From IMG/VR virus record IMGVR_UViG_3300045974_000132, positions 62,001-126,000 of that record: a stretch of 64,000 nucleotides of DNA; one strand, 5' to 3'. The position numbers and the translations under genes are program-made. Positions 950 to 62,195 of the stretch are shown piece after piece. The first letter of the stretch is position 1, and every line of letters begins with the position of its first letter. A model generated the notes under the pieces. The model worked only from the letters and a program-made list of their open reading frames with translations, did not search any database and was not told the DNA's origin.

Positions 950-1108
950 TCAACTCACATGCACATCGTTCTGCAACGGTTTACCTTGAAGTGTCGAGAC
1001 AGTATTCGACCATAGCACCCAAGGAAGCGTTACATAGTATTTCATTGCTTCACAAGCTCTACGAAAAGGAAGCATCCTGTAGTATTCTTTAGTTATTATA
1101 CCAGTCAT
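950..1108 (-). CDS. small hypothetical protein (52 aa)
   Basis: ATG overlaps the upstream stop (ATGA at 1105-1108) and the ORF fills the gap: MTGIITKEYYRMLPFRRACEAMKYYVTLPW... Confidence 0.5.
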   Translation of the reverse strand: MTGIITKEYYRMLPFRRACEAMKYYVTLPWVLWSNTVSTLQGKPLQNDVHVS

Positions 1109-2037
1109 GATGCTTCACTCCTTGGGTAGTATTTATCGAATAGCGCATCTAGGAATTGCTTAGGCGTAAATTTATTAGTACGCATAATACCTATAAGCTT
1201 GTCTAGCATTTCACGTTCTTTTGATATGTCACCCGCTTTAGCACCCTTTGCATTATGCAGGTCTGCACTAAAGCCATGAACAGCATCTGCATACCTTAGA
1301 CGCTGAAAAGCATCGTAGGCTTTACCGCCTAAAGCTCTTGCTGCCATGTAAGGGTCTTGCCCGGGCTTTATCTTAGCAAACCAAAGTTCCAACCAAGGGC
1401 GAATTGAATTCTGCCTATTACGATACTTGAAATCGTACTCACTATTAAGTCTGTTAGCTGGGGCAAAAGCCGACTTATCAAACTTAACAGGGACTGCTTT
1501 AGCTTTATTCAACAGCATTAGTTCTTTGGTATCTTCATAAAACCAAATCTTTACACCGTGAAGTAATGCTGCCTTCTTTAAGGAAAACATTAAGTGTGTT
1601 CTTTCGTTCACATGGCAATGTATTTCCTTTATATACTTAAAAGCAGGTATCACAGGCTTGCGTGAGAATACGCGATCTTCTGATTCATACCTATCACGAC
1701 GAAGATGATACGCATCATCGGTATTGTAAGGAGCCGCATTTGCTTTATCAAGAGTTGCCCAGTAGTCTACCGGAGCAATCTTATATGACTGGCCAAGCTT
1801 ATACCCATCTAAAACAAATATAACACTTGATGACCAAACATGTTGTCTTGTATAGCTACCTACCTTAGTGCGTGTTGTACTAAGGTAGTAAGCTCCTTTA
1901 CCTAATGCTTCCTCTGCTGAAGTACCTTCACTAGGCTTTAGATAAAACTTATCCTGCGTAACGATTTGAGCAGCTGGACTTAAGGTAGTCAGATGGTATA
2001 GAACATCGCTTTTGGAGATAGATACTAGGACTTCCAT
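1105..2037 (-). CDS. putative ADP-ribosyltransferase-fold protein with N-terminal S-x-S leader
   Basis: Motifs in ART order: LYHLT (strand 1), YLSTTR (STS-like), VIFVLDG, ESEDR (ExE). Starts MEVLVSISKS. Confidence 0.5.
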   Translation of the reverse strand: MEVLVSISKSDVLYHLTTLSPAAQIVTQDKFYLKPSEGTSAEEALGKGAYYLSTTRTKVGSYTRQHVWSSSVIFVLDGYKLGQSYKIAPVDYWATLDKANAAPYNTDDAYHLRRDRYESEDRVFSRKPVIPAFKYIKEIHCHVNERTHLMFSLKKAALLHGVKIWFYEDTKELMLLNKAKAVPVKFDKSAFAPANRLNSEYDFKYRNRQNSIRPWLELWFAKIKPGQDPYMAARALGGKAYDAFQRLRYADAVHGFSADLHNAKGAKAGDISKEREMLDKLIGIMRTNKFTPKQFLDALFDKYYPRSEAS

Positions 2038-2041
2038 AGCG

Positions 2042-2230
2042 TTACTCGTGAACTAGAGGTTGTTTTAAGTGGCACCTTACAACATTTAAGCTACATGTAA
2101 ACATAGCATGGGTATAATACATGTTTGTTGCCATCACTAAGGCAAGAAAGCCTAAGGGAGTTACAGTGGACAGGCGACGAGCTTTAACGTAATTACCAGC
2201 AAGGGTAAAATCAAGCATTTGAGTAATCAT
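2042..2230 (-). CDS. small hypothetical protein with one hydrophobic segment
   Basis: ORF with GGGAG RBS; fills the gap between neighbours. Confidence 0.5.
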   Translation of the reverse strand: MITQMLDFTLAGNYVKARRLSTVTPLGFLALVMATNMYYTHAMFTCSLNVVRCHLKQPLVHE

Positions 2231-2258
2231 TTTATGTAACTCCCTTATTTATCAGTAT

Positions 2259-2567
2259 TTAAAAGAAACTAGGTTGAGCAATAGAACGAGTAAGAGCCAT
2301 TAAGCCTTCTTGGAAATGCGTCTTACTGATGGATGCCCAACGCTCAGGCTCTGCGTCTTTCAATCGACTATCTTCCTCAGCAGCATCTTCAAACAACTTA
2401 CCTGAAGCTAGTCCCTTAACATGCTCCCTTTGTTTTGCAATATGCTTCTGCGCTTCTAAAATCAAAGCTTCTAGTTCCAAGCCTTTATCCTTGATAGCAT
2501 TCATCAGATCAATTTCAGCTTGGCTTAGTTCACGGTAGCCGCGAATCTTACGGTGTTGATTTTCCAT
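2259..2567 (-). CDS. acb2: anti-CBASS cyclic-oligonucleotide sponge Acb2 (T4 Vs.4 family)
   Basis: MENQHRKIRGYRELSQAEIDLMNAIK...EPERWASISKTHFQEGLMALTRSIAQP closely matches the Pseudomonas phage Acb2 sequence as recalled; Y11 and K26 are in register. Confidence 0.9.
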   Translation of the reverse strand: MENQHRKIRGYRELSQAEIDLMNAIKDKGLELEALILEAQKHIAKQREHVKGLASGKLFEDAAEEDSRLKDAEPERWASISKTHFQEGLMALTRSIAQPSFF

Positions 2568-2589
2568 TTGTATTAACTCTTTCTAGTAT

Positions 2590-5181: not shown

Positions 5182-5193
5182 GAAAATAATCCT

Positions 5194-16947: not shown

Positions 16948-17265
16948 TTACTTGTCTAAGTAGGCATTAATTTCATACTTACCGCTCGGCATCTTATGCC
17001 ACTGTAAGTGCAAAGCATTGCATACCTTATTGTCGCGCTTATCGCCTAAGTCGATTGTAGCTCTACCGTCACGCCCTGTTAAGAAGCCTTCCCACGGTTC
17101 ACCGTCTTCATCTAGCAAAGACATACGAGCTTCTTCACAAGCTGCCCAAATATTATCCATCGGAATCTTTGGATAATACGTCTTACACAAATGGGAAAGA
17201 GCTTCCTTGAGCTTATCAGGAAGTGGGCCATACGTATTAGCAGATACGCTGATAAGAAGTTCCAT
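16948..17265 (-). CDS. hypothetical protein with N-terminal S-x-S leader
   Basis: Starts MELLISVSAN; 105 aa. Confidence 0.7.
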   Translation of the reverse strand: MELLISVSANTYGPLPDKLKEALSHLCKTYYPKIPMDNIWAACEEARMSLLDEDGEPWEGFLTGRDGRATIDLGDKRDNKVCNALHLQWHKMPSGKYEINAYLDK

Positions 17266-37574: not shown

Positions 37575-37690
37575 ACTTTTGGCTCCTGTTAATTGTTGAA
37601 ACGAACGTGCAATTTCAAACACGTACAAATAAATTATGGTATTCAGAAATTGCGCTAGACCTACAAAACCTACAAACTACCAATCTACTA

Positions 37691-38673: not shown

Positions 38674-39810
38674 TTACAGCTTTCTAGGATCGAGCAAGTG
38701 TGGGCCAATAGCGGACACAAAAGCAGGCGTGTTAACAACCGAGCATTCAAAGCCCTTTGCATCATGGCACTTACGGAAAGCCAAACGTCCATCTGCTTGC
38801 TTATACGTAGGACGACCCATTTGGGTATGCTTGCAAGGGGATAAGTTAATACCCTTACCGACTACTTGGTTGCAGATAGAACACGAATACGAGGTATAGT
38901 AGAAGCCTACTGAATACGCATTCTGCTGACGGGTAAGGATTTGATCTACGAGTAAGCTATCCTTAGTACGGTCAAACGCCATAAGAAGAACAATCTTGTA
39001 GTAATTCGGATTGAACTTAATAGGACGTAAGAATGACTCAAGAATTACACCCTTGGCTTTCAACAGATTCTTGTTGTCGTGTTCCTGGTGGGTAGGCTGA
39101 CCCTTGAAGGTCTTGTACATCTGCATACCGTATTCAGGTTTGAACGACAGCATTTCCCTCAGTGAAAGTGAATCACCGTTGGTGTTGGGTAATCCGCTGA
39201 AGATTGCAGGTATAGGGACAAGAATATAATCCCTAATATCGCGGCTAATATCGTAATGCTCCGCAGCATACGGAAGCCAGTAGTTGCAATCGAGGATACG
39301 CTCAGAGTGCCCAGTGCCAGAAATCTGGGCCGAAAGTGGTAGTTCATTTGTGCCTTGTGCTAGTTTATCTAATGGTATGGGATTAAGGCCTAAACCAAAG
39401 CTTTGACTCAGCATCCCTGTAGAGGAACTAGCTAAAGCCAGTTTGTCTAAACTCCTACATAATGAAGTATCAATCCCACCTTTAATAGCGTTAGGATTTT
39501 GACCATCACTAAGAAGAGGATATCCTGTACCTGGGTTACCTGCGCCTAAGTAGGGCACGCTGGGATCATAATGCCCATGCGGTACATCAGCATTAGGATT
39601 GATAGGTTCTTCTGAGCCAATCTCACCAACATCTTCAGGATTGGCTACTTGGTCAAGTTGCTTGAACTCAAAGTAGTCACCAATTTGGGTAAGAACACCG
39701 ACAGGATTACCTTGGAAAGCAACAGTCGTAAACTTGGAATTACTTTGCGGCATTAAAGAGTAACTATTACTCTTTGCCCACGTATGCGGGTCTTGAATTT
39801 GAACAGTCAT
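38674..39810 (-). CDS. prohead maturation protease (HK97/assemblin-type fold)
   Basis: PNTNGD, THQEHD (His), KGVI, YSVG (Ser), CSIC/C.H zinc insert, FECSVVNTPA. Confidence 0.7.
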   Translation of the reverse strand: MTVQIQDPHTWAKSNSYSLMPQSNSKFTTVAFQGNPVGVLTQIGDYFEFKQLDQVANPEDVGEIGSEEPINPNADVPHGHYDPSVPYLGAGNPGTGYPLLSDGQNPNAIKGGIDTSLCRSLDKLALASSSTGMLSQSFGLGLNPIPLDKLAQGTNELPLSAQISGTGHSERILDCNYWLPYAAEHYDISRDIRDYILVPIPAIFSGLPNTNGDSLSLREMLSFKPEYGMQMYKTFKGQPTHQEHDNKNLLKAKGVILESFLRPIKFNPNYYKIVLLMAFDRTKDSLLVDQILTRQQNAYSVGFYYTSYSCSICNQVVGKGINLSPCKHTQMGRPTYKQADGRLAFRKCHDAKGFECSVVNTPAFVSAIGPHLLDPRKL

Positions 39811-40135: not shown

Positions 40136-41761
40136 TTAAATCTTAGGTATCCACTTCGGAACACGCAAGCCTAGGTTGTCAAAGAACTCTTTGAGAACGT
40201 TCGGTGAGATATACGCATTGATTGCAGTCATACCTGTAAGCTTCTGATTCTCACCGCTACCTACACGGTGATGAAGCATTTCGCCTACTTGCTTCATTTC
40301 CTCTTTAATCCATTTCTCAACACTGGCTTGACTAGGATGTTCAGACTTCTTGAAAGGCGCGCCGCTAAGAATCTTCAACGCGAGTTTAGTACCAGCTAAG
40401 TGGCGGAACTTATGAATCGTGATACCTGTAGGAACACCCAGGCTCTTCAGATACGCATTGACAGGAGCTGCACCTAGAGGCTTACTACGATTGGTGAACA
40501 CAACGTCAGTCGGCTTCTTACCCTTGATAAGTTCCCTGATGATTGCAATCACCTTACGGTTTGTTGCAGTCGTACCTAGTAAGATGTGATGCTGCTCAGT
40601 ACCCTTCTTACCAGTGTATTTGAATTCAAAGCCCTTGCTGATAGGAAGTAACTGCTTTACCAACAGCGTACTCATACCGTAACGATCTTCGCCTTCCATG
40701 TTCTTGCTATCACCGCCGATACGAGCTTGGGTTTGATAGATTGCTTCAACCAGAGCAGCAAGCACTTGGGTACGCGTATCAAGCGAGTCAAGATCCTTCA
40801 CCCACTTAGTACGGAACTTATCAACTTCCTTCATGAAGGAAGAGACTTTATCAAATCGTGCAGCTTTATTGCCTGAAGTAAATGCAACGGTACGAAGACG
40901 CTGTGCGACATTACCTACTAATGAACAAACATAGGTATTATCAGTCAAAGGGTCATACTTCGGGTTCATCTTCACTTCGCCGATAAGCATACCTGCAATT
41001 TGCTTGCCTGCTGTCGTGTATAAGCGGCCTTGTTCGTCAATGCTCCCTATAAAGCCTCTAGGGATGTAATTGCAACCTAAGGTATCTAGGTATTTACGAA
41101 CAATCTTAACGTCGATAAACGGCTTACCTGACGACCGGATGAACTTGAATAGATACTTCTTATAGTTGGCTACGAAGACTTTACGCAGTTCACTATAGCG
41201 TTCAACCAGTTTAACCTTACCCGGAAGCTCACGGAAGTCACGCATTTCATTGAGAGTCAGAATAGGATCATTCCGACGCCCAGTGAGTTGCAGTACCAAC
41301 TTAATCATTCCGCCTTCAGTAGCTTTATCACCTACTGCTGCTTCAACCTCTTCATCATCTGGAACGAAGTTTGTTGCAAGCTTTGAATCACCGGTGACTG
41401 CATAGATATTACGCGTGATGCGATTCCAGGCAGGCTCACTATCCTTACGATAGTACAGAAGGCAATCTTTAATCATCGCCAACTGTTCTTGGGAGATAGA
41501 AGTATCTGCTTGGAAATCAGCAACAGCTTCTTTCAGCCGGGCACTTGCATCTGCACCATCGTTCACCGTAAACTCCATGCGTGAGCGAATGAAGTTGTTG
41601 GTGATAGTAGTGAAGTCACGCAAGATTCCGAACTTCTTCAGAAAGGGTTGTGAAGCACTCACCCATTGCGTGAATTGAGCCTTTAGCGGCAACACATCTT
41701 TTTCTGTAAGGCTGAGAGCCATAACAGCCAAGCATTTAGTAAAGTTAATAACTGGATTCAT
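40136..41761 (-). CDS. DNA topoisomerase IB
   Basis: ARIG (Arg), YGMSTL, YTGKKG (Lys), VNAYLK, HKFRH (Arg), AINAYI (catalytic Tyr). Confidence 0.85.
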   Translation of the reverse strand: MNPVINFTKCLAVMALSLTEKDVLPLKAQFTQWVSASQPFLKKFGILRDFTTITNNFIRSRMEFTVNDGADASARLKEAVADFQADTSISQEQLAMIKDCLLYYRKDSEPAWNRITRNIYAVTGDSKLATNFVPDDEEVEAAVGDKATEGGMIKLVLQLTGRRNDPILTLNEMRDFRELPGKVKLVERYSELRKVFVANYKKYLFKFIRSSGKPFIDVKIVRKYLDTLGCNYIPRGFIGSIDEQGRLYTTAGKQIAGMLIGEVKMNPKYDPLTDNTYVCSLVGNVAQRLRTVAFTSGNKAARFDKVSSFMKEVDKFRTKWVKDLDSLDTRTQVLAALVEAIYQTQARIGGDSKNMEGEDRYGMSTLLVKQLLPISKGFEFKYTGKKGTEQHHILLGTTATNRKVIAIIRELIKGKKPTDVVFTNRSKPLGAAPVNAYLKSLGVPTGITIHKFRHLAGTKLALKILSGAPFKKSEHPSQASVEKWIKEEMKQVGEMLHHRVGSGENQKLTGMTAINAYISPNVLKEFFDNLGLRVPKWIPKI

Positions 41762-41815
41762 TTGTATCACCGGTATTTGTTATAAGCGTAGAGTGTGTAT
41801 AAATGCTCTTTACAC

Positions 41816-42034
41816 TTATTCAACCTTCGGCTTAGACTTGGAGGCAGAGGCTGCGATTTCATCAACAACCTTATACATCTCCTTCTTGAAGCCCTCAATG
41901 TCCTGATTGACTAACAAATCAGAAACAGTGTTACCCCGATCACCAGCTAGCGCCGTCATAAGCCTAGAAAAGAAGGCACTACGATTAGACTTGTGCGACT
42001 TCTTCTTGCTTGTAGAAATTAATAGGATTGTCAT
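41816..42034 (-). CDS. small basic protein with S-x-S leader
   Basis: Probable start MTILLISTSKK at 42034 with AAAGGA RBS. Confidence 0.6.
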   Translation of the reverse strand: MTILLISTSKKKSHKSNRSAFFSRLMTALAGDRGNTVSDLLVNQDIEGFKKEMYKVVDEIAASASKSKPKVE

Positions 42035-44822: not shown

Positions 44823-45344
44823 CTATAGTTTAACGCCTTTATTCAACCATTGTTTAAACGCATCCCTATTCTCAACATGGCGGGCACGATACCCAATGAA
44901 CTGTAATTGAACAGGGAGTTCTTTAACACCTAACTTCTTTAAAGCAAGAGTACGGGCACGCCCTTCATGTCCTACAAACATTGGTACGCCTTCTTCGTTC
45001 TCAACAAAGAGATCAATGTTAATATCAAGAAAGGGACTTGCAATACTCTCACCTTGCTTCAGAAGATCAACCATCTGATAAGAGTCTCGATCACGCTTAT
45101 CTATGTCCGGTAAGGCATATAATAGAGTGTCGATATTCATAATAGCCATGCAACCCTTGTACAGCACATTTTGGTTGTTGGGCGTATTCCCTAAGCCGTC
45201 TTTATTATCAATGACAAACCATCCGTGCATACCTTTGAGCTTATATACACCTTCAGCATGTTTAAGACTAAACTCAGACAGACGGTCTACATCATCCGGT
45301 GGATATATTCTACCTTCTTTGCTTATGGATATGTAGAGTTCCAT
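44823..45344 (-). CDS. ParB/Srx-like domain protein with S-x-S leader
   Basis: IASPFL...GHEGRART.AL..LG...LPV; starts MELYISISKE. Confidence 0.6.
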   Translation of the reverse strand: MELYISISKEGRIYPPDDVDRLSEFSLKHAEGVYKLKGMHGWFVIDNKDGLGNTPNNQNVLYKGCMAIMNIDTLLYALPDIDKRDRDSYQMVDLLKQGESIASPFLDINIDLFVENEEGVPMFVGHEGRARTLALKKLGVKELPVQLQFIGYRARHVENRDAFKQWLNKGVKL

Positions 45345-45345: not shown

Positions 45346-46578
45346 TTAATACCTCATTCCATTACGTATGCTGCGCCGCATTGACCTAATGTCCTGCTTG
45401 CGTTCTACATGAGCTACAATCCTCTGCGCTTCCGCTCTAAGGGTTGCAAGCTGGGCTTCTGATACTTCGGTAGGTGGCAATTCATGGAACCACTCATTAG
45501 GAACTATGTCAAAGCGAGAAGAGGTAGCACCTATACGTATAAACGTCCACCGCTTACCGGCCCTGTCATTAGGACATACTATCATACCCTTAATCCAGGT
45601 CTTAGTATCTGGGTGATACCATTGAGCAAGACGCATATTAGAAGGACGGATAGCACGAGTCTCAGCTTTATCCCTAGCAGCTTTAAAGTTCTGCATCTTT
45701 TCTTGAGCAGCTTGTTGCCTCTGTTCAATCTGCTTCTTCTCATCCTCGTCAAAGTATTCCATCTTATTGAACTGAGAATAGCGAGAAGGGGTAAGACCGA
45801 ACTTATACATCCACTTAGCCCATAGAGGACCGTGACCGTTATTACCTTCAGGTGCTGACTTTTCTATGTCTGTAACAGCTTGATGGGCAATTTCATGTAC
45901 GATAGTCGTCAAAGCAACATGTTCCTGGGCTTTTAACAAGCGCGGAGAAACACCCAACTTATGCTGACGCGCATACCATACACCTAGTCTGCTAGTTTTA
46001 GCTCCCATATCCTTAGTAACAATGAAGGAAGGCATGAGCAACTTATTATCGCACTTAGTCTTGTTGACCTTATTCCATACTTCAATCAGATAACCAATTG
46101 CATCGGTGTTGGAGCGAATACGACTAAACCTAAGTGGATTACCGTAAGCTGTAACAAGAGCATGTTCTTCTTTTTCTTTCGGGGTCTCTTTTACTTCTTT
46201 AACCGCAGCAGGTGGAGTAGACGGGCGTTGCTCTTTCTTCAGAACAGGTAGGCGTGTTCCGGTTCTAGCTGCTCTATCTCTAGTAGTGGGTGCCTCTTGT
46301 GCTGCAAATAGCTTCTTAGCCCTAGCAGGCTTTAGTTCATCGGCTCGAGGAGCAACGCGCTTATCAAAGTCATCTTCTGTTATTTTGTATTCGTATGTTA
46401 AACCGCGTTCGGGAGTAACGACATAGACCGCAGTCCTGCCGTCACGATAACCGAAAACATCACCTTTCTTCAATGTCAAAGAACGAGCACCTGCGCTTAG
46501 ATTTAAAGCACGGGTTCCATTGAAGGTAGCAAAGTCATAGCTCTCGAAGTCCTTAGACAAGGATAAAAGGATCTTCAT
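45346..46578 (-). CDS. SprT-like zinc metalloprotease with S-x-S leader
   Basis: TIVHEIAH...GHGPLW..WM; starts MKILLSLSKD. Confidence 0.8.
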   Translation of the reverse strand: MKILLSLSKDFESYDFATFNGTRALNLSAGARSLTLKKGDVFGYRDGRTAVYVVTPERGLTYEYKITEDDFDKRVAPRADELKPARAKKLFAAQEAPTTRDRAARTGTRLPVLKKEQRPSTPPAAVKEVKETPKEKEEHALVTAYGNPLRFSRIRSNTDAIGYLIEVWNKVNKTKCDNKLLMPSFIVTKDMGAKTSRLGVWYARQHKLGVSPRLLKAQEHVALTTIVHEIAHQAVTDIEKSAPEGNNGHGPLWAKWMYKFGLTPSRYSQFNKMEYFDEDEKKQIEQRQQAAQEKMQNFKAARDKAETRAIRPSNMRLAQWYHPDTKTWIKGMIVCPNDRAGKRWTFIRIGATSSRFDIVPNEWFHELPPTEVSEAQLATLRAEAQRIVAHVERKQDIRSMRRSIRNGMRY

Positions 46579-46587: not shown

Positions 46588-46992
46588 TTAAAAGTATATT
46601 TTCTTAAAAGCAGGAATGCTGATTGCTTTCATACAGGGTAGTGTAGTACTACCGTCAGGAAGCTTCGCTTTGTAGAATACCTCACCGTCGGCATCAAAGA
46701 TATGTCCAGTAGTTTCAGTATCCACTATTCGATGCTGATGACGATCATACACAACGGCATGAAAAGGATCTTTTACCATATCAAGAAAACCGCCAAATAT
46801 GTAGATCGTCCAGTCGCTACCCCAGTCCTCAAAGTCTTCTGCTTTAAGGTACCAAGCTATAGCCCCATAACAGCTATCCTTCGTGTAGGTTCCCGGTTCA
46901 TGTCCTGGGTTTGTGGATTTAATAGTCTTGGCTATTTTCTGTAGCACTTCTTCGGGTGTCTTACGGCCTGAAACAGATATGTAGAGTTCCAT
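46588..46992 (-). CDS. putative papain/transglutaminase-like Cys-His-Asp protein with S-x-S leader
   Basis: DSCY..A, FHAVV, IVD in catalytic-triad order; starts MELYISVSGR. Confidence 0.45.
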   Translation of the reverse strand: MELYISVSGRKTPEEVLQKIAKTIKSTNPGHEPGTYTKDSCYGAIAWYLKAEDFEDWGSDWTIYIFGGFLDMVKDPFHAVVYDRHQHRIVDTETTGHIFDADGEVFYKAKLPDGSTTLPCMKAISIPAFKKIYF

Positions 46993-49364: not shown

Positions 49365-49730
49365 TCAGCCCTTAGGATATTCTTTTACGAAGGTGTTGTA
49401 CATTTTGATAGCCTGCTCACGTTCTTCCCTCAAAACGTTTAGGCCCTTCTCCTTACCAGCAGAAGTTTTAGCAGTGTAGAGTGCGATTATAGAACTTACC
49501 GTCTCCAATCTATCTACTACATTGCTTTTTGTTTCCTTCAAGTCAGCTACCCAATCAGGGTCTTGATAGTTGGTACGTATCTGTCGATCCAGGTCTGCTA
49601 TGTTAGACTTGTAAGTAGTCCGCAACTTATCGAGCAAGATCATAGGAAAAGGTTTAGGATTAACAGGCAGAGCGTCTGTTAAATAACCGTATTCACTTCT
49701 AGAAATAGATGTTTCAATAAGGAGTTGCAT
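49365..49730 (-). CDS. hypothetical helical protein with S-x-S leader
   Basis: Starts MQLLIETSISRS. Confidence 0.65.
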   Translation of the reverse strand: MQLLIETSISRSEYGYLTDALPVNPKPFPMILLDKLRTTYKSNIADLDRQIRTNYQDPDWVADLKETKSNVVDRLETVSSIIALYTAKTSAGKEKGLNVLREEREQAIKMYNTFVKEYPKG

Positions 49731-50384: not shown

Positions 50385-51086
50385 TTAGATACCCGGCTTA
50401 ACTTCAGTGTCTTTGTCTTCGTCATCTTCCTTATCCTTAGATTCAGCACCCTCAGGTACGTCATCACCGATAGTAGGATCGACAAAACTGATACTAATCT
50501 TCTCTACACGAACGCCTGTGCTTTCAACCGTTTTATAGCGGCGGAACTCTTCAGGAATTTCATCGTCATTGAAGTCTTCAATTTCAGGAAGATGCAACTC
50601 TGATAACTTTACTTTTACAGTTCTAGGAGCATCTGGATTACCCGGCTTGGTAACGCCCGTCATCTTAGTCACTACTGCCTTACGCGGGTCTTTATGGACA
50701 ACAGCTGCCGGCTTGGGAGTAGAAACTTTAAGCATAGTACCTAGCTTAGTGATAGGTATTGCCTTTTGCTTAACAGGACTTGTAGGAGCCGCAGAGGACT
50801 TGCGAGTAGTAGGTTTTGCAGAAGTAAGAGTAGGTATCTTACCGTTATACTGCTTAGAAGCATTCATCAAGTTTTCAGACTTGGTGATCTTCAGTTGGAA
50901 CTTTGAACCGTCTTCTAAAACGATTTCATCGTATTCCTTATTACGCAGTTCCCGTACTCCGAATAAAGCTTTAGGGGCTAATACGTGCTTGTCACCCTTT
51001 TCAGATAGAACAGTGCGTGACTTGGCTCCTGCGTAACGCATCCAGTAATACTTAGCAGGATTAGCGGCTGAGATAGATATTTTCAT
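50385..51086 (-). CDS. hypothetical basic protein with S-x-S leader and acidic tail
   Basis: Starts MKISISAAN; K/P/T-rich middle; second KISIS just before the acidic tail. Confidence 0.65.
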   Translation of the reverse strand: MKISISAANPAKYYWMRYAGAKSRTVLSEKGDKHVLAPKALFGVRELRNKEYDEIVLEDGSKFQLKITKSENLMNASKQYNGKIPTLTSAKPTTRKSSAAPTSPVKQKAIPITKLGTMLKVSTPKPAAVVHKDPRKAVVTKMTGVTKPGNPDAPRTVKVKLSELHLPEIEDFNDDEIPEEFRRYKTVESTGVRVEKISISFVDPTIGDDVPEGAESKDKEDDEDKDTEVKPGI

Positions 51087-51088: not shown

Positions 51089-51583
51089 TCAGTCCTTAAT
51101 GTCTTCAACCTGTTCACCCGTAAGAGTGATCTCAAATTTCAGGGAAGATAACATGCGGTTAAGCTTTGCAAAGCACTTAGGCTTATCACCGATTTTGTCG
51201 GCAAGTGTAATGTGCGCTTCATAGTCTGGGAAGCTATGCTGACAACCTAGATCAACGTATTGCTCATGGCGAATAGCAAGATCGCGTGAATTAAGTTGAA
51301 GCACAAGATACCCTGCATTGTCATGACCCGGCCAGTAGGATAGCTTGTCGGACCACGCTTTGAATGTGAACGGTCCTGCATTCAATAGTTTGGTTACGCG
51401 AATGCTGTGAGGAGCTTCCTCTTTACTGTACATAATCGTGCAGTGTAGATCCGCTTCCTCATATGTCTTAACACCCTCTGCTTGAAGTTCTTCATTGAGG
51501 GCACTCATTAGCTGGCTAAATCCTTTTACAGGCATAACGCAGCTATATAGTCCAGACTTACCTGTGTATGTTGCTTTCTTCAT
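51089..51583 (-). CDS. acb1: 2H phosphoesterase, Acb1 / T4 gp57B-like (paralogue 2)
   Basis: GLY, LHCTIMYS, LVLQLNS..L..RH....LGCQHSFPDYEAHITLA. Confidence 0.85.
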   Translation of the reverse strand: MKKATYTGKSGLYSCVMPVKGFSQLMSALNEELQAEGVKTYEEADLHCTIMYSKEEAPHSIRVTKLLNAGPFTFKAWSDKLSYWPGHDNAGYLVLQLNSRDLAIRHEQYVDLGCQHSFPDYEAHITLADKIGDKPKCFAKLNRMLSSLKFEITLTGEQVEDIKD

Positions 51584-52143
51584 GCTGGTGCCCCTTCAGA
51601 CCCTTCATCAAAATCTAGTAGAGTTTCCTCATAGCTGCTACCACCACCTTGCCTATTAGCAGGCTGCTGCATAGCTTGTTTAAATCGTAGAGCAGCTTCT
51701 TCCTTAGTCATTTTAACAAGGTGTGTTCTATCTACGACTGCTGCCCAGAACTGAAAAGCGTCTTTAATCGGATAGGATAAGGGCAGTGTATAGTGCTGTC
51801 CCATGCGTAGTTTGCACAGATCAATTGCCATCTGACCTACTTGAATAACACCGTGCGTTAGTTGCGATGGTGACTTTTCAGCAAAAGCATCCGTCATCGT
51901 ATCATCCATGTTATGGCGATACCCAGAATACTCAATAAGTTTTGCATCAATGTCGGCATGCTCCAACTCTTTAAGCATGTTCTTAAGGAGTCGCGGATAA
52001 GCATGTTGAGCTTGCTCTGCACTAACCTGAGCCTGCCTAGCCAAAGTATCTGTCTGTATGTAATGGTTTATTATGTGAGCTACGGTTGCGGATAAGCTGG
52101 CGTAGGAAAGAATACTATTGCTTACGGAAATTAATATATTCAT
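51580..52143 (-). CDS. hypothetical protein with S-x-S leader
   Basis: Starts MNILISVSNS; THGVIQVGQMAIDL resembles the His/Asp strands of papain-like folds, but no upstream Cys. Confidence 0.65.
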   Translation of the reverse strand: MNILISVSNSILSYASLSATVAHIINHYIQTDTLARQAQVSAEQAQHAYPRLLKNMLKELEHADIDAKLIEYSGYRHNMDDTMTDAFAEKSPSQLTHGVIQVGQMAIDLCKLRMGQHYTLPLSYPIKDAFQFWAAVVDRTHLVKMTKEEAALRFKQAMQQPANRQGGGSSYEETLLDFDEGSEGAPA

Positions 52144-53999
52144 TTCATACCCTTCTTGTTCAAGTTCTTAATTGCCTTGATGATAGTTTCGTTAGCTTTA
52201 GACTCAAAGGTATTACGATTTACCACATGCTTACGCTTACCTGTCTTGGTAAAAGCATAGGGTTCATGGCCTGTAAAGTCACGATCTAACAATGGGCGAG
52301 CTCCATTAGCCCCTAATACAGCAGACCTAGAGCCAGCCCTAACAGGAGAAGCTAATGCAAGTAACGCACGTTCTGCGGATTCAGACTCTTCTCCGCCTTC
52401 ACCACCAGCAGGAGCAGGATTTAGAGCAGTAATCTTCTTCATGTATTCCGAGATACGCTTACGAATATCTAGGTCTTCATCTTGCTGACGGATGAGTGTT
52501 TCAAGATCAAGCCCACCTGCAGCAGCCAATGCGCGTAACGGAACTGGAACACCCTTCTGTGTCAAGGAATCAAGCATGTCGATATATGCAGTATCACCTT
52601 CAGCCTTAAGTTGCTTAGTCCAATGCACAGAAGGAATAAACAACTTACTACCGTCATTCATTTGCATCAAGGCTTGTTCACTATCAACCTGATTCATCAG
52701 ATTCGGATTGATATTGACGCGACCGTTCTTAACAGTGAAGCCGTTGATTAGCGAAATCAGTGGGAAGAGGGTATCATAGAACAACTTCCGAGTCATAGTC
52801 TCACGGAAGCTACGAATCATATCAAGGAATACTGTGATAGCATTACCTGAAGTGTCGTAGTTTGCGTCACCGGATAAGAAGCCTTCTGATATACCTAGAC
52901 CGCGCAGCTTATGGCTTAATACGCTATCTGCAAAGTCTGTTGACTTCCAGAAGTCACCACCCTGACGTAATTCTTCAACCATCACACCTGAGCGTGTTGC
53001 AATGATAGCACCGATCGGGTCACTATCTGCATTCATAAACAACTCAGTCATGAATTCCATATCTTGTACAGAAGGAATCCATTGATCGCCGTCACCCAAA
53101 GACAAGTGAAGAATGCCTCGTTGGCGTCTAGCTGATTCAACTAGAGTACCGCGGAAGAGATTCTTTTCAATCAAATAAATGGGCAAAATCCGACGGAAGT
53201 ACGAAGTACCTCGGTCAGATCGAGAGAATGTTCTACGTGGGACATAGATGGTGCTTAAAGGATCAAGCTCGATAGACCCTTCAAGGATCTTGTCGATAAT
53301 CTCATGCCCTAAATGTTCTTTGATCCGTTTGATTCTAGGCGTATCTCTACCTAGGATTTCTTTCAATTGATCTGGGAACTTAACTGTGATAATGGGCTGT
53401 TGACTATAGAACGGAAGTGATTCAACGGTCAAGTCATCAGCTTGGTGAGGAAGAATATCCGTAAAGATTTTCTTCTCACGATTATACAGTAGGGAGCTAC
53501 AATGCTCACCTAATACCAGATAATCTACAGCAATCTCTGGAATCAATGTACGGAAGTTCAACCGTTCAATTGTCTCCAGATATATCTCACTGATCTTTTT
53601 GGTGTCACCTTTAACAGACGGAAAACCGCCTAGGTTGAACTCACCAAAAGGTAGCATAGACATTAAGTCAACAGCAGAACCTGCGACGCTATCATTGTAG
53701 TAAATATCCCTATATACGCTATGTAGTACCGACTCCGTCTGAGGAGTCATACCTGTTAGCATAGGATCTACGTCGATAGTGATTGCATTACCCGATATGT
53801 TCGTATTCGGACTACCGGTTACGCGCATTGACGTATTTGAAGTTGATTCAAATCCTTTAGAGATAGGCTTAGTCCCTACTCTCGTACCAGATTTTGAGGT
53901 AGTGCCTAAGTTTCTTTTTAAGTCAATTGGTTCTGTTTTTGTAGTTTGTTGACGGACAGCCTGGATTGCAGGATGCCCGCTTTTAGACACTTTAAACAT
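52140..53999 (-). CDS. portal protein
   Basis: Position downstream of terminase; IYYNDSVAGSAVD, RGTSYFRRIL, LGISEGFLSGDANY. Confidence 0.8.
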   Translation of the reverse strand: MFKVSKSGHPAIQAVRQQTTKTEPIDLKRNLGTTSKSGTRVGTKPISKGFESTSNTSMRVTGSPNTNISGNAITIDVDPMLTGMTPQTESVLHSVYRDIYYNDSVAGSAVDLMSMLPFGEFNLGGFPSVKGDTKKISEIYLETIERLNFRTLIPEIAVDYLVLGEHCSSLLYNREKKIFTDILPHQADDLTVESLPFYSQQPIITVKFPDQLKEILGRDTPRIKRIKEHLGHEIIDKILEGSIELDPLSTIYVPRRTFSRSDRGTSYFRRILPIYLIEKNLFRGTLVESARRQRGILHLSLGDGDQWIPSVQDMEFMTELFMNADSDPIGAIIATRSGVMVEELRQGGDFWKSTDFADSVLSHKLRGLGISEGFLSGDANYDTSGNAITVFLDMIRSFRETMTRKLFYDTLFPLISLINGFTVKNGRVNINPNLMNQVDSEQALMQMNDGSKLFIPSVHWTKQLKAEGDTAYIDMLDSLTQKGVPVPLRALAAAGGLDLETLIRQQDEDLDIRKRISEYMKKITALNPAPAGGEGGEESESAERALLALASPVRAGSRSAVLGANGARPLLDRDFTGHEPYAFTKTGKRKHVVNRNTFESKANETIIKAIKNLNKKGMK

Positions 54000-60063: not shown

Positions 60064-60316
60064 GAGGCTTGATGTGTTTGCTTACATAGACGAAAGCTGC
60101 CCGTTTAGCAGTGTTTGCATCTTTGAAGCCGGGCAGGTCATCCCTAGTTCTATTATATGGAATCTGGTGAGCAGTGTTACCAGCATTGTATCCCCAACCG
60201 CCTGATTGATTACGCATTACAGAAGCAGCATGTTCATGATCGAGCATCAACCTTTGCTCATCCCAGTTCGTATCACCCTTGACCCAACGAGGCTGCATTG
60301 CTGCCCTAGCTCCCAT
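60008..60316 (-). CDS. hypothetical protein
   Basis: Probable start MGARAAMQP at 60316 with AGGTG RBS. Confidence 0.55.
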   Translation of the reverse strand: MGARAAMQPRWVKGDTNWDEQRLMLDHEHAASVMRNQSGGWGYNAGNTAHQIPYNRTRDDLPGFKDANTAKRAAFVYVSKHIKPLDRKKKNEFLPQQLQESV

Positions 60317-60728
60317 TTTCGTCACCTGTATTGTATGCAACAAACCACAGTGGGAAACCTGTTGCTTGATTGCAGCACTGCATAACATACACTACTTTCA
60401 AGTTAGGCTTCTCAAAGTAATCTTTGATGAAAGCTTCGATCTTGTCCTTATCCGAAGCATACCAGTACTGCCCTTTTAGGCCATGCTTCTTCCAAAGCTC
60501 GTCAAACTTCTTGTAGTTCCACTGCATCATGCGGTCACTATAAGCAGACGCATTCATTTGGTCATTGGGCAGATTACGCCAAAGAATGTAGCTATCGTAG
60601 CTGTAAGGATGCGTAGAAGGAGTACGCTCAATAATCTGGTTATGCTCATCCATGTAAAAGCCATAGATGTAACTACCTTCTACTTGCGGTACAAGATCAC
60701 CGTTTATATTCTGTTGCATTCTGTTCAA
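60306..60728 (-). CDS. hypothetical protein
   Basis: Aromatic-rich ORF (THPYSYD, YSDRM, CNQATGFPLW). Confidence 0.65.
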   Translation of the reverse strand: MNRMQQNINGDLVPQVEGSYIYGFYMDEHNQIIERTPSTHPYSYDSYILWRNLPNDQMNASAYSDRMMQWNYKKFDELWKKHGLKGQYWYASDKDKIEAFIKDYFEKPNLKVVYVMQCCNQATGFPLWFVAYNTGDENGS

Positions 60729-61056
60729 TCCTTTTCTTACGCTTTGATTCAGACCGTTTTGCTATCAACAAGTAAGACTCTTCCATTGGCTTACCCATGA
60801 AATAAATCTCTTTGTAGTCTTCAATTTCAAGGTAGTCTTTGTAGCCGTAAAATAAACCAACTACAACATCTTCACACCACTTACGGAAGTCTGGGTAGTC
60901 CTCCCGATAAGGTTTCATTTCAGCATTGAATTGTGTAGCAGACATTTGCCAAAGCTTGCCGTCTTCATCTTGGCATACTACCCTACAGGAAGCAGCGATC
61001 TTACTGGCCTTAGCATCTACGATTTTTACCGGAGCAACTAAGCCTTTTGGTTTCAC
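60697..61056 (-). CDS. hypothetical protein
   Basis: Overlapping-gene cluster. Confidence 0.6.
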   Translation of the reverse strand: MKPKGLVAPVKIVDAKASKIAASCRVVCQDEDGKLWQMSATQFNAEMKPYREDYPDFRKWCEDVVVGLFYGYKDYLEIEDYKEIYFMGKPMEESYLLIAKRSESKRKKRIEQNATEYKR

Positions 61057-61289
61057 GGAGCAACCTCGATAGGGACTGACGCATACACGGTACGATCAGA
61101 AACAAGTTCCACCCATTGAACATCTTCGGTTTCATAGCGTTCGTCTTCACCGGGTAGGCCGAAAGCAGCTAACGGGTTTTCAAAAGCAACTGTCTTTGCA
61201 GTAAGTTCCTTGATACAAACTTTGGATACTTTCTTTTGACCGGGTAGTTTAACAAACCAATTTTCACCAGTTGTAATCATTTGTTTCAT
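61053..61289 (-). CDS. small hypothetical protein (SH3-like beta pattern)
   Basis: 4-nt stop/start overlaps on both sides. Confidence 0.6.
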   Translation of the reverse strand: MKQMITTGENWFVKLPGQKKVSKVCIKELTAKTVAFENPLAAFGLPGEDERYETEDVQWVELVSDRTVYASVPIEVAP

Positions 61290-61474
61290 TTTATTTCCTT
61301 ATCAGCTACAATATGGAACACATTCATATCGACAGTGTAGTCACCGTTCGACTTTGGGCCAGAGCGCAACACCTTAGTGTAGCCGTTATCATAAACGTAA
61401 TTGACAGCTTCTACACGTTTGTCCATTGGGCAGGTAACAGTGATACGCTCAATCTTTGTAAGTTTGATGTCCAT
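61286..61474 (-). CDS. small hypothetical protein
   Basis: Translationally coupled on both sides. Confidence 0.6.
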   Translation of the reverse strand: MDIKLTKIERITVTCPMDKRVEAVNYVYDNGYTKVLRSGPKSNGDYTVDMNVFHIVADKEIK

Positions 61475-61725
61475 TAGAAGCCCTCTTTGGTCAAAGTTTC
61501 AGCAATGATTTGGGCAATGCGATAAGACTGAGCATCTTCAACATGGTCATGCTCTTCAGCAGGTGTCCAATCGTTCTGCTTGATTTCACGTTCAGAAGCA
61601 AAGGGCTCAGCAAAGTGATCGGGAAACCAAACAGTGATTTCATCGGTATCACGAGGGCACGTAGGATTCTTGATCTTGATCTTTGTGCCGTAATACTTAC
61701 CTTCGAGCGGAAGAATCTCAGCCAT
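61474..61725 (-). CDS. small hypothetical protein
   Basis: TAATG coupling on both sides. Confidence 0.6.
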   Translation of the reverse strand: MAEILPLEGKYYGTKIKIKNPTCPRDTDEITVWFPDHFAEPFASEREIKQNDWTPAEEHDHVEDAQSYRIAQIIAETLTKEGF

Positions 61726-62195
61726 TATGTTGTCCGTTCAATCTGTTTTGAGTACAGTAGAGCATCGACACCTAAACGCTTAACTAGTATAAAGCCTCTG
61801 CGTTTGTAGAACTTCAAAGCACGCTCATTGTTTCGATGCACTGCCAGCGATAAGGTTTTACACTTCAGGGCTTTGGCTTGCTTCACCGCTTGAGCAAACA
61901 GCCTGTCTGCACCTCCCTTACCCTTTTCAGAGTCAAGCACGCTTATCAGGTCGATGTACATGTCTTCAGGCTCATTCGGATCAAGGACAAGCTGCCCAAC
62001 AATTTCCCCATCACGCATTAGAAGGGTGAAGTTATCCCCCTGTTCAACCCACTCAGATGCCTCTCTGAGGTTCATTCGATTAACGTTATTAGACTCTTCA
62101 TGAGAACGTTGGCGAAAAGCAACCAAGTCTTCAGGTGTCACCTTAGACACAGGCACAATGCTCAAAGAGCCGGCCAAACTTATACTAAATTCCAT
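61725..62195 (-). CDS. GNAT acetyltransferase with S-x-S-like leader
   Basis: ISVLDSEKGKGGA, LAVHRNNERALKFYKRRGF; starts MEFSISLAGS. Confidence 0.85.
   Translation of the reverse strand: MEFSISLAGSLSIVPVSKVTPEDLVAFRQRSHEESNNVNRMNLREASEWVEQGDNFTLLMRDGEIVGQLVLDPNEPEDMYIDLISVLDSEKGKGGADRLFAQAVKQAKALKCKTLSLAVHRNNERALKFYKRRGFILVKRLGVDALLYSKQIERTT

What the first reader, a model, noticed from the sequence alone, without database searches (positions are those of the whole stretch)
1105..62195. A shared N-terminal 'hydrophobic-S-x-S' leader on about ten unrelated proteins: candidate capsid-targeting/maturation tag for an injected effector set
Seen: otherwise non-homologous ORFs begin MEVLVSISKS (start 2037, ART-like), MELLISVSAN (17265), MTILLISTSKK (42034), MELYISISKE (45344, ParB-like), MKILLSLSKD (46578, SprT), MELYISVSGR (46992, Cys-His-Asp), MQLLIETSISRS (49730), MKISISAAN (51086), MNILISVSNS (52143) and MEFSISLAGS (62195, GNAT). 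Similarity stops right after the motif. Codons mostly differ, pointing to selection on the peptide, although 45344 and 46992 share 17 nt (ATGGAACTCTACATATC), hinting at a portable cassette. The leader is too short and lacks the basic n-region of a Sec signal. Ligase, helicase, terminase, the other GNAT and the tail proteins lack it. Established: T4 internal proteins carry a ~10-aa capsid-targeting sequence removed by the gp21 protease, and phiKZ-type heads are processed at S/A/G-x-E. Inference: this phage uses a Ser-based tag to load diverse enzymes (ART, metalloprotease, Cys enzyme, acetyltransferase, ParB-like) into the head for delivery at infection. I know of no description of this motif, but could not search.
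Basis: partly seen in the sequence, partly recalled or inferred. Interest (0 to 1): 0.88.

Follow-up and report, generated by a model that had tools for sequence, protein, structure and literature searches.

The report
Capsid-loading leader tag, jumbo phage
About 15 unrelated proteins of this 286-kb jumbo phage, and many more in its relatives, begin with the same 8-residue leader, which most likely works like the phage T4 "capsid targeting sequence" that loads enzymes into the phage head for delivery into the host, although no one has yet shown this experimentally.

Summary
All ten N-termini are as described. The motif M-[K/E]-h-x-h-[S/A]-h-[S/A] is locked to residues 1-8 in 14 proteins of the 286-kb genome, against 0.65 expected (P about 1e-14). 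It recurs in the related Lu11/PaBG/JA11/Alexandra jumbo phages and in 80 metagenomic relatives.

- **Small residues, not serine:** the high-GC Pseudomonas relatives write Ala for Ser, as in MKIQLAVA. Orthologues keep the leader through S/A swaps.
- **Selection on the peptide:** Ser uses both codon families and synonymous sites vary freely.
- **An add-on:** the leader lies outside the folded domains.
- **Where the genes lie:** in this genome the main cluster lies inside the head module, between portal and protease. In Lu11, 14 of 18 consecutive genes after the portal carry the leader.
- **Protease:** it has the T4 gp21 fold (Z 10.6).
- **Leader swap:** homologues of two cargo families (a DarT-like ADP-ribosyltransferase and a NUDIX hydrolase) carry a T4-type leader (MRAxEFIxE) in another lineage.

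Best reading: a T4-CTS-like loading tag, probably cut at small-x-small by the prohead protease. This is unproven. No virion proteomics covers the tagged proteins, and the cleavage motif is inferred. It is a new variant of a known kind.

The parts
1105..2037 (-). Tagged gene, 310 aa, leader MEVLVSIS (codons at 2014-2037). DarT/Tpt1-like ADP-ribosyltransferase fold.
   Evidence: N-terminus verified. AF2 on 28 homologues gives pLDDT 83.6; residues 1-8 have pLDDT below 50 and the fold starts at residue 12. The top seven Foldseek PDB hits are DarT and Tpt1, E 2.5e-4 to 4.4e-3. Homologues P0002-P0019 keep the leader; distant ones carry a T4-like leader.
16948..17265 (-). Tagged gene, 105 aa, leader MELLISVS. 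No known domain. Lies between the gp5-like spike (17486-19015) and a PAAR protein (16650-16937).
41816..42034 (-). Tagged gene, 72 aa, very basic. Leader variant MTILLISTS (one residue longer).
44823..45344 (-). Tagged gene, 173 aa, leader MELYISIS. ParB/sulfiredoxin-like (a lead, not a test).
   Evidence: ESM Atlas feature hits at 0.94-0.95 to ParB/Srx clusters. No Pfam hit.
45346..46578 (-). Tagged gene, 410 aa, leader MKILLSLS. SprT-like zinc metallopeptidase.
   Evidence: Pfam PF10263 at 2.1e-8, residues 195-261. Weak KMPT-N hit at residues 14-70.
46588..46992 (-). Tagged gene, 134 aa, leader MELYISVS. Function unknown.
   Evidence: Shares its first 17 nt with the gene at 45344.
49365..49730 (-). 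Tagged gene, 121 aa. Leader variant MQLLIETSIS (two-residue insertion).
50385..51086 (-). Tagged gene, 233 aa, leader MKISISAA. Weak KMPT-N-like N-terminal region.
   Evidence: Residues 1-99 resemble the Alexandra 625-aa protein that starts MILSVSAS.
51580..52143 (-). Tagged gene, 187 aa, leader MNILISVS. Its start overlaps the portal gene's stop.
61725..62195 (-). Tagged gene, 156 aa, leader MEFSISLA. GNAT acetyltransferase.
   Evidence: Pfam PF00583 at 4.4e-15. The earliest GNAT-family match starts at residue 13 and the Acetyltransf_3 match at residue 18, after the leader.
38674..39810 (-). Prohead protease, 378 aa, T4 gp21 / herpesvirus assemblin fold. Invariant His244 (codon 39079-39081) and Ser300 (38911-38913). 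Conserved small-x-small then Phe (LSQS|F, residues 134-138) at the N-terminal edge of the catalytic core.
   Evidence: phrog_18299 at 5.5e-82. AF2 core model pLDDT 83.5. VIA-align top hit is T4 gp21 (5jbl_A), Z 10.6, followed by the VZV, HCMV and KSHV proteases. Invariant columns; boundary motif seen in 40-odd proteases.
35667..37628 (-). Scaffold-like core protein, 635-653 aa. It has two zinc-ribbon-like motifs, a long Asp/Glu-rich stretch and a conserved C-terminal domain. Many h-x-[SA]-x-[SA] sites (VSVSKE, VTVSKSED, DKSTSGD).
   Evidence: The PHROG label 'ATPase' has no Pfam support. S-x-S is not enriched beyond its Ser content (my calculation).
33806..34903 (-). Major capsid protein, 365 aa. 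Its N-terminal extension of about 72 residues is absent from the phage G capsid protein. Candidate maturation site HQSTS|AEE at residues 65-72.
   Evidence: phrog_2522. PDB 6wkk_A aligns from residue 75, and phage G gp27 is only 282 aa. The PaBG capsid protein loses about 20% of its mass on maturation (PMC7412058). Alignment of 61 capsid proteins.
52140..53999 (-). Portal protein, 619 aa. Upstream boundary of the tagged-gene cluster.
   Evidence: phrog_16240 at 3.3e-200.
40136..41770 (-). Topoisomerase-IB-like protein. Its orthologues in Lu11, HRDY3 and PaBG start with a leader (MNVHIAVA, MMEMSIAA, MHTSLSAV). Here the N-terminus is only leader-like (MNPVINFTK) and the start codon is uncertain.
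   Evidence: Pfam PF01028 at 1.2e-17..

Best explanation
**What it is.** The leader is an address label for the phage head. It is the counterpart, in the Lu11/PaBG/JA11/Alexandra ('Lupandier') jumbo-phage clade, of the T4 capsid targeting sequence.

**Anatomy.** The leader has eight residues, M-[K/E]-h-x-h-[S/A]-h-[S/A]. Alternating hydrophobic positions 3, 5 and 7 suggest a short amphipathic beta-strand. A polar linker rich in Lys, Asp and Pro follows, and then the folded enzyme.

**Proposed mechanism (inferred).**
1. During prohead assembly the leader docks the protein onto the core, either the acidic scaffold-like protein or the protease.
2. The gp21-fold prohead protease then cuts at the small-x-small element, probably after residue 8. 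This frees the cargo inside the shell.
3. The cargo travels with the DNA into the next host cell.

**Cargo.** It includes a DarT-like ADP-ribosyltransferase, an SprT-like metallopeptidase, a GNAT acetyltransferase, a ParB/Srx-like protein, a Tad6-like anti-Thoeris protein and, in relatives, a NUDIX hydrolase and a topoisomerase-IB-like protein.

**Shown.** The motif, its fixed position, its conservation across the clade at the peptide level, its place outside the folds, the clustering with head genes, the protease fold, and the leader swap on homologous cargo.

**Inferred.** Docking, cleavage at S/A8, presence in virions, and ejection.
For: 1. **Position-locked enrichment.** This genome has 14 hits against 0.65 expected, replicated in Lu11, HRDY3, JA11 and Alexandra. 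There are 95 distinct canonical leaders across the seven genomes and the 80 IMG/VR loci.
2. **Selection on the peptide.** Ser6 and Ser8 use both TCN and AGY codons (27 of 55 AGY at position 6). The Lu11 MKIQLAVA leaders differ at synonymous sites. Orthologues keep the leader through S/A swaps, for example MEVLVSISKSD-VLYH here against MEMMLALAGSS-VLYH in HRDY3, and JA11 MEIEVSLSAL against HRDY3 MELQLALAAV against Lu11 MRIQLAVAAV.
3. **An add-on.** Pfam domains start at residues 13-24. In the AF2 model residues 1-8 have pLDDT below 50 and the fold starts at residue 12.
4. **Gene position.** The main cluster, at window 41816-52143, lies between portal and protease. In Lu11, 14 of the 18 genes gp202-gp219 carry the leader; they lie downstream of the portal and of an annotated middle/late promoter.
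5. **Protease fold.** The protease has the T4 gp21 fold, Z 10.6, with invariant His and Ser 56 residues apart. T4 gp21 is the enzyme that removes the T4 CTS (PMC9026906).
6. **Leader swap.** Distant homologues of the DarT-like protein start MRAxDFLxE or MRASELIQE. Their contig L177 has many genes starting MRA[RKQ]EFIxE or MLIRELTE. These resemble T4 IPII/IPIII MKTYQEFIAE, which I read from the T4 record. The L177 NUDIX protein is 59% identical (3e-63) to a clade NUDIX protein that starts MRITISMS, and the alignment begins right after both leaders.
7. **The same element in head proteins.** Small-x-small occupies a conserved column followed by Phe at the N-terminal edge of the protease core in 40-odd proteases, S-x-S or A-x-G according to the phage. 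In some relatives the protease ORF itself starts with it (MKRELSLSF). It also sits at the boundary of the capsid protein's N-terminal extension (STS|A, ATA|S, ALA|S) and recurs in the scaffold-like protein.
8. **Cargo types.** They match proteins known to be carried in T4 heads or delivered with phage DNA, namely T4 Alt (an ART) and IPI (an anti-restriction protein) (PMC9026906) and the ART and GNAT domains of injected polyvalent proteins (PMC7824862). One tagged protein has a Tad6 anti-Thoeris domain at 6.9e-36.
Against: - **No direct evidence.** The only virion proteome in the clade (PaBG, 14 gel bands) covers abundant tail and capsid proteins and no canonical tagged protein.
- **Co-folding.** The protease core with a 25-residue leader scored 0.02. 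The tool says this is no evidence either way.
- **Specificity.** All characterised gp21-type proteases (T4, phiKZ, 201phi2-1, SPN3US) cut after Glu (PMC9026906). Cutting after Ser or Ala would be a new specificity. No [SAG]-x-E or [LI]-x-E motif is enriched after the leaders (13% against 19% in untagged proteins), so a Glu-type cut is not supported either.
- **Low information.** The tripeptide small-x-small also occurs at other conserved capsid-protein positions. It is not enriched in the scaffold-like protein beyond its Ser content.
- **Scattered genes.** One tagged gene sits in the baseplate module between spike and PAAR, and several lie far from the head genes.
- **Uneven spread.** PaBG and NCTB have few canonical leaders.
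Confidence: 0.55

Rival explanations
1. Targeting without cleavage, or cleavage without targeting. In the first case the leader docks cargo in the prohead but stays attached. In the second it is only a protease site, and some other feature brings the proteins into the head.
For: Cleavage at S/A8 is inferred only. gp21-type proteases are Glu-specific where known (PMC9026906). The co-fold gave no answer. In T4, the targeting and processing determinants of the CTS are separable.
Against: The conserved small residues at positions 6 and 8 resemble the small-x-small element at the protease core edge and at the capsid-protein boundary. The hydrophobic positions 3, 5 and 7 and the K/E at position 2 are conserved too. 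A bare cleavage site would not need them.
Confidence: 0.15
2. The leader is read by a partner other than the head. It could be an N-terminal degron or a recognition strand for a host or phage protease, unfoldase or chaperone that times the activity of these enzymes in the infected cell.
For: A short hydrophobic N-terminal strand is the kind of element that AAA+ proteases and adaptors recognise (established knowledge, not tested here). Some tagged genes lie far from the head genes. No virion data exist.
Against: This reading does not explain the clustering between portal and protease. It does not explain the same element in the protease and the capsid protein. It also does not explain why homologous cargo carries a T4-type head-targeting leader elsewhere.
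Confidence: 0.1
3. An export or membrane signal (Sec, Tat, lipoprotein or type III secretion-like) that sends the proteins out of the cytoplasm.
For: Small residues at -3 and -1 resemble the signal-peptidase rule. Type III signals are Ser- and Ile-rich N-termini (both from general knowledge, not tested here).
Against: The leader has only three alternating hydrophobic residues. It has no basic n-region (position 2 is often Glu) and no h-region long enough to span a membrane. The cargo proteins are cytoplasm-acting enzymes (ART, GNAT, NUDIX, topoisomerase-like). The motif is conserved across phages of different hosts and in uncultured relatives.
Confidence: 0.03
4. A nucleotide-level feature (translation-initiation context, an operator for a translational repressor, or a recombination cassette) that merely translates into a similar peptide.
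For: Two leaders share 17 nt. The genes at genome 274050 and 274360 share similar upstream sequence.
Against: Ser uses both codon families. Synonymous positions vary freely in this genome and in Lu11. Ser is replaced by Ala across lineages while the hydrophobic pattern is kept.
Confidence: 0.02
5. Chance, N-terminal composition bias, an ordinary first beta-strand of common folds, or hidden paralogy.
For: Some regular-expression hits are ordinary beta-1 strands, such as the glycosyltransferase MKIAVYAIA family. Two tagged proteins share weak KMPT-N hits.
Against: Shuffles that keep N-terminal composition give 0.73 against 14 observed. The pattern replicates in independent genomes. There is no pairwise similarity beyond the leader. 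The leader lies outside the domains.
Confidence: 0.02

Closest known systems
[quoted passage not shown]
   Same: - A short N-terminal leader shared by otherwise unrelated proteins.
- A gp21-fold protease is encoded nearby.
- The cargo includes host-takeover and anti-defence proteins; T4 also carries the ART Alt in its head.
- The cargo genes form variable arrays.
- Homologues of two cargo families carry a T4-like leader in another lineage.
   Different: - No sequence similarity: M-K/E-h-x-h-S/A-h-S/A against MKTYQEFIAE.
- There is no L/I-x-E element. The likely scissile motif is small-x-small.
- This genome has 14-19 tagged proteins, against three IPs in T4, and many are enzymes of up to about 900 aa in relatives.
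- It is a different phage clade, with an HK97-type capsid protein unrelated in sequence to gp23.
- Packaging and cleavage are untested.
Head propeptides of phiKZ, 201phi2-1 and SPN3US, cut at S/A/G-x-E by gp21-like proteases
   Same: Jumbo phages with many processed head and ejection proteins and a diverged gp21-type protease.
   Different: Those propeptides vary in length and share only the Glu-ending tripeptide. Here the leader is a fixed 8-residue N-terminal motif, and no x-E motif is enriched after it.
Herpesvirus assemblin cleavage sites (Ala|Ser)
   Same: The protease fold is the same (VZV, HCMV and KSHV proteases at Z 6.3, 5.4 and 4.2). A small residue is proposed at P1.
   Different: The resemblance in specificity comes from memory and inference and is not tested. 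The viruses are eukaryotic, and no N-terminal cargo tag is known there.
Encapsulin cargo-loading peptides
   Same: They work alike. A short terminal peptide on diverse enzymes directs them into an HK97-fold shell.
   Different: Encapsulin tags are usually C-terminal, are not cleaved, and bind the shell protein directly. They share no homology with this leader. This comparison rests on general knowledge only.

Membership tests
T4-type capsid targeting sequence system | Short N-terminal leader shared by otherwise unrelated proteins | tested here: met
   14 canonical leaders against 0.65 expected. No similarity beyond the leader.
T4-type capsid targeting sequence system | A gp21-family prohead protease is encoded by the phage | tested here: met
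   AF2 model against PDB: T4 gp21 (5jbl_A) at Z 10.6, rmsd 2.7 over 142 residues. His and Ser are invariant.
T4-type capsid targeting sequence system | The leader ends in the protease's cleavage motif (L/I-x-E in T4) | tested here: not met
   No [LI]-x-E or [SAG]-x-E enrichment after the leader. A different element, small-x-small, is shared with the protease edge and the capsid-protein boundary, but cleavage there is unproven.
T4-type capsid targeting sequence system | Sequence similarity to MKTYQEFIAE | tested here: not met
   The T4 IP leaders were read from NC_000866. There is no resemblance. A T4-like leader does occur on homologous cargo in contig L177.
T4-type capsid targeting sequence system | The leader is necessary and sufficient for incorporation into the head, and the cargo is present in virions and ejected | not testable with these tools
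   No virion proteome covers the tagged proteins.
phiKZ-type head propeptides | Cleavage after Glu at S/A/G-x-E | tested here: not met
   13% of tagged against 19% of untagged proteins have the motif in residues 9-30.
Sec-type signal peptide | Basic n-region, a hydrophobic core of 7-15 residues, and small residues at -3 and -1 | tested here: not met
   Position 2 is Lys or Glu. There are only three alternating hydrophobic residues. The small -3/-1 rule alone is met.
gp21/assemblin-fold serine proteases (the protease at 38674-39810) | The fold, with conserved His and Ser in that order | tested here: met
   The catalytic role of His244 and Ser300 is inferred from invariance and spacing.
ADP-ribosyltransferase superfamily, DarT/Tpt1 branch (the cargo at 1105-2037) | ART fold | tested here: met
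   The top seven Foldseek hits are DarT and Tpt1, probability 1.00, E 2.5e-4 to 4.4e-3, although the TM-score is only 0.3-0.47. Activity and target were not tested.

The most novel reading that the evidence does not exclude
A whole clade of jumbo phages uses an 8-residue amphipathic beta-strand label, M-K/E-h-x-h-S/A-h-S/A, to load 10-20 different enzymes and anti-defence proteins into each head. The label is cut by a gp21-fold protease that has moved from Glu to small-residue (assemblin-like) specificity. Such labels are lineage-specific and interchangeable: the same cargo families carry a T4-type label in another lineage. If so, the injected proteome of uncultured phages could be read from sequence alone.
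Probability: 0.4. Interest if true: 0.75.

Novelty: new variant of a known kind. Interest (0 to 1): 0.62.

Why it matters
**A sequence-only rule.** If the leader is a head-loading tag, it lists the proteins that these jumbo phages deliver with their DNA. This clade includes phages of Pseudomonas, Dickeya and Erwinia and many uncultured relatives.

**What the list holds.**
- A DarT-like ADP-ribosyltransferase, a metallopeptidase, acetyltransferases, a NUDIX hydrolase and a topoisomerase-like enzyme.
- A homologue of a known anti-Thoeris protein.
- Many proteins of unknown function, which makes it a ready shortlist of candidate early-acting takeover and anti-defence factors.

**Other consequences.**
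- It would show that a gp21-fold protease can use a non-Glu site.
- It would show that address labels are swapped between lineages on the same cargo.
- It would supply a short tag for loading foreign proteins into jumbo-phage heads, as the T4 CTS did for T4.

Tried and rejected
- **Protease-leader co-fold.** I folded protease residues 137-378 with residues 1-25 of the 134-aa tagged protein. The score was 0.02, the controls were not run, and the tool rates this as no evidence either way.
- **Foldseek for the protease.** The search against the PDB found nothing. The wider VIA-align search found gp21.
- **PaBG virion table.** I matched its molecular weights to ORFs to ask whether tagged proteins are in virions. 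Only abundant tail and capsid proteins and a 221-kDa helicase-like protein are listed, so the test was uninformative.
- **Counting [SA]-[LTVIM]-[SA] along 61 capsid proteins.** The tripeptide is too common to single out the boundary site.
- **Glu-type cleavage motif after the leader.** It is not enriched.
- **Phage G capsid structure.** I first read the 6wkk chain as a mature N-terminus. The gene is only 282 aa, so it marks where the fold core begins, not a cleavage site.
- **A shared N-terminal domain (KMPT-N).** This rests on two sub-threshold Pfam hits, and the pairwise E is 1. I rejected it as an explanation for the set.
- **S/A covariation between leaders and the capsid-protein site.** Some phages mix Ser and Ala leaders (L101/L103), so there is no strict covariation and GC content is a confounder.
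- **An AF2 job refused.** I reran it without those rows.
- **Looking for a gp21 family member on contig L177.** This was not possible because the record is not held.

Full report
**What the window is.** The window is bases 62001-126000 of a single 286,393-bp contig with 43.7% GC and almost all window genes on the minus strand.
- Its major capsid protein (33806-34903) is 57% identical to those of Pseudomonas phages HRDY3 and Lu11, 54% to PaBG, 53% to phage NCTB, 49% to Dickeya phage JA11 and 47% to Erwinia phage Alexandra. The PaBG authors call this jumbo-myovirus group 'Lupandier' (PMC7412058).
- The window holds, in order on the minus strand, the following genes:
  - large terminase;
  - portal (52140-53999);
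  - a run of small genes;
  - NAD ligase;
  - more small genes;
  - a PAS protein;
  - a topoisomerase-IB-like protein;
  - the prohead protease (38674-39810);
  - an Acb1-like protein;
  - an acidic scaffold-like protein (35667-37628);
  - a 231-aa virion protein;
  - the capsid protein;
  - sheath, baseplate, spike and PAAR.

- On 442 crude gene calls for the whole genome, h-S-h-[SAG] begins at residue 5 in 15 proteins, against 0-4 at neighbouring registers.
- The canonical pattern (hydrophobic at residues 3, 5 and 7; Ser or Ala at 6; Ser, Ala or Gly at 8) occurs 14 times. The internal-position rate predicts 0.65 (P 1.6e-14). Shuffling residues 2-12, which keeps N-terminal composition, gives a mean of 0.73 and a maximum of 4.
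- Six further canonical tagged genes and one looser variant lie outside the window.
- BLASTP finds no similarity among the tagged proteins beyond the leader.

**It is a clade-wide feature, and not Ser-specific.**
- I fetched six related genomes whole.
  - JA11 has a run of genes starting MEIEVSLSA, MEILVSISA, MKVILSLSA, MQVLISLSK and MELLISLSK.
  - Alexandra and NCTB have several.
  - The higher-GC Pseudomonas phages carry Ala at the same position: MEMMLALAA and MELQLALAA in HRDY3, and MKIQLAVA in Lu11.
  - The pattern is enriched 10- to 24-fold in Lu11, HRDY3, JA11 and Alexandra. This is an out-of-sample test of a pattern defined on this genome. PaBG and NCTB are near background.
- Eighty IMG/VR loci around capsid-protein homologues add many more, such as MKINISLSS, MKLWISTSS and MKIFIALAA.
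- Over 95 distinct leaders, the unconstrained position 2 is Lys or Glu in 58% and position 9 is Ala in 36%.
- Orthologues keep the leader while swapping Ser and Ala.

**Selection is on the peptide.**
- Ser6 and Ser8 use both TCN and AGY codons (27 of 55 AGY at position 6).
- Lu11's near-identical MKIQLAVA leaders differ at synonymous sites.
- This rejects an RNA- or DNA-level explanation.
- The 17-nt identity between two leaders here is real but exceptional.

**The leader is an add-on.**
- Pfam domains begin after it. The earliest GNAT-family match starts at residue 13, KMPT-N at residues 13-14 and Tad6 at residue 24.
- In an AF2 model of the 310-aa protein (28 homologues, pLDDT 83.6), residues 1-8 are below pLDDT 50 and the fold starts at residue 12.
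- Residues 9-20 are enriched in Lys, Asp and Pro and depleted in Cys, Ile and Gly, as expected of a linker.

**Link to the head.**
- The main cluster (41816-52143) lies between portal and protease.
- In Lu11, 14 of the 18 consecutive genes gp202-gp219 carry the leader. They lie downstream of the portal and of an annotated middle/late promoter. In HRDY3 the array abuts the portal.
- The protease core (AF2 pLDDT 83.5) matches T4 gp21 at Z 10.6, well above everything else, followed by herpesvirus assemblins. His244 and Ser300 are invariant.
- In T4, gp21 removes the 10-residue capsid targeting sequence that loads IPI-III and foreign fusions into the head. Alt, an ADP-ribosyltransferase, is also carried and processed (PMC9026906).

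**Leader swap, the strongest indirect evidence.**
- A search with the 310-aa protein found 18 closer homologues (P0002-P0019), and nearly all begin with this leader directly before the conserved LYH core.
- Four more distant homologues begin MRAxDFLxE or MRASELIQE.
- The contig of one of them (L177) has about a dozen genes starting MRA[RKQ]EFIxE, MLIRELTE or MLLNEITD.
- T4 IPII and IPIII start MKTYQEFIAE and IPI starts MKTFKEFT, as read from the T4 record.
- The L177 NUDIX protein is 59% identical (3e-63) to a NUDIX protein of this clade (L096) that starts MRITISMS. The alignment begins right after both leaders.
- So two cargo families carry either label, according to lineage. This argues that the two labels do the same job.

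**Where would it be cut?**
- No Glu-type site follows the leaders.
- The only conserved candidate is small-x-small.
- The same element occupies a conserved column followed by Phe at the N-terminal edge of the protease core in 40-odd proteases. Examples are LSQS|F here, ESKS|F in JA11 and ALG|F in Lu11 and HRDY3. In some relatives the protease ORF starts right there (MKRELSLSF).
- The capsid protein has an N-terminal extension of about 72 residues.
  - The phage G capsid protein aligns only from residue 75 and is itself only 282 aa.
  - The PaBG capsid protein loses about 20% of its mass on maturation.
  - The boundary region usually holds STS|A, SLS|A, ALA|S or ATA|S.
- The acidic scaffold-like protein is full of such sites.
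- These points fit one protease motif, but the motif carries little information and is not enriched in the scaffold beyond composition. Cleavage after residue 8 therefore stays an inference, and it would be a new specificity for a gp21-type enzyme.

**Cargo.**
- Confirmed by Pfam: SprT-like metallopeptidase and GNAT, and a Tad6 anti-Thoeris domain in the tagged 250-aa protein at genome 277825-278577.
- Supported by fold: the 310-aa protein is DarT/Tpt1-like.
- A lead only: ParB/Srx-like.
- Topoisomerase-IB-like orthologues carry the leader in Lu11, HRDY3 and PaBG.
- A 221-kDa helicase-like protein found in PaBG virions starts MQIFSTSAA in JA11.

**What is missing.** There are no proteomic, N-terminal or genetic data for any tagged protein. 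The co-fold gave no answer. I found no paper that describes the leader.

**Verdict.** The motif is a real, clade-wide N-terminal leader. It most likely works as a T4-CTS-like head-loading and propeptide tag (confidence about 0.55). It is a new variant of a known kind.

Noticed in passing
L177 (ENA ERZ2944856 NODE_52), 3576-16856; also L178 and L179: An unrelated metagenomic phage-like contig has about a dozen genes starting MRA[RKQ]EFIxE, MLIRELTEA or MLLNEITD. This is a T4-CTS-like leader on NUDIX, GH19, Zeta-toxin-like and ART-GNAT fusion proteins, and looks like a second, undescribed tagged-cargo array.
   Followed up: partly
window 35667-37628 (-): The protein that PHROGs labels 'ATPase' (phrog_20988) has no ATPase domain in Pfam. 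It has two zinc-ribbon-like CxxC motifs, a very long Asp/Glu-rich stretch and a conserved C-terminal domain in all seven phages. It looks like a scaffold or core protein. The likely true start is MPKAEF (635 aa), not the TTG that the ORF listing gives.
   Followed up: partly
window 37691-38206 (-) and 51089-51583 (-): Two Acb1-like 2H phosphoesterases (Pfam Acb1, 1e-9 and 2.7e-20; anti-CBASS family) lie inside the head module. Neither carries the leader.
   Followed up: no
genome 277825-278577 (+) = L095:7825-8577; genome 279107-279418 (+): The tagged 250-aa protein has a Tad6 (anti-Thoeris) domain at residues 24-144. Its residues 155-247 are 35% identical to the separate tagged 103-aa protein two genes downstream. 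The NCTB homologue of the Tad6 part sits inside an 823-aa protein.
   Followed up: partly
window 42045-43940 (-): A 631-aa protein made of several PAS domains (PAS_4 at 2.8e-32) lies inside the head gene cluster. This is unusual for a phage.
   Followed up: no
window 32318-33703 (-) and 56481-57668 (-): Two HNH-endonuclease-like genes (phrog_559) flank the head genes, one next to the capsid protein gene and one overlapping the start of the terminase gene. They are probably homing endonucleases.
   Followed up: no
genome 265549-266007 (-), 236112-236705 (+), 235638-236060 (+): Three small ORFs resemble residues 226-312 of the capsid protein (E 3e-14, 8e-12 and 8e-7). Lu11 has one too. They may be capsid-protein fragment paralogues of unknown meaning.
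   Followed up: no
window 34784-34813 (-), capsid protein residues 31-40: The most conserved stretch of the capsid protein's N-terminal extension is (L)ALSS(S/A)TGE(F/I)NA. A similar LALASSSTG occurs in the N-terminal part of this phage's protease (residues 124-132). It may be a shared docking element.
   Followed up: no
window 16650-19015 (-): One tagged 105-aa gene sits between a gp5-like spike with an M15 peptidase domain and a PAAR protein. In secretion systems an effector or adaptor would sit there. This location fits poorly with a head cargo.
   Followed up: no
window 59785-60045 (-): An 86-aa ORF starts MNFYLSSSRS. It is a near-canonical leader with Ser at position 7 and may be an eleventh tagged gene in the window.
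   Followed up: no
Lu11 43753-45093 (gp074) and HRDY3 223205-224428; many IMG/VR loci: A conserved protein of about 410-450 aa next to the protease starts M-x-I-[AS]-[LI]-A-W-A-F-K-D in every relative. It is leader-like and ends in A-W-A|F, like the protease edge motif. I found no orthologue in this genome.
   Followed up: no
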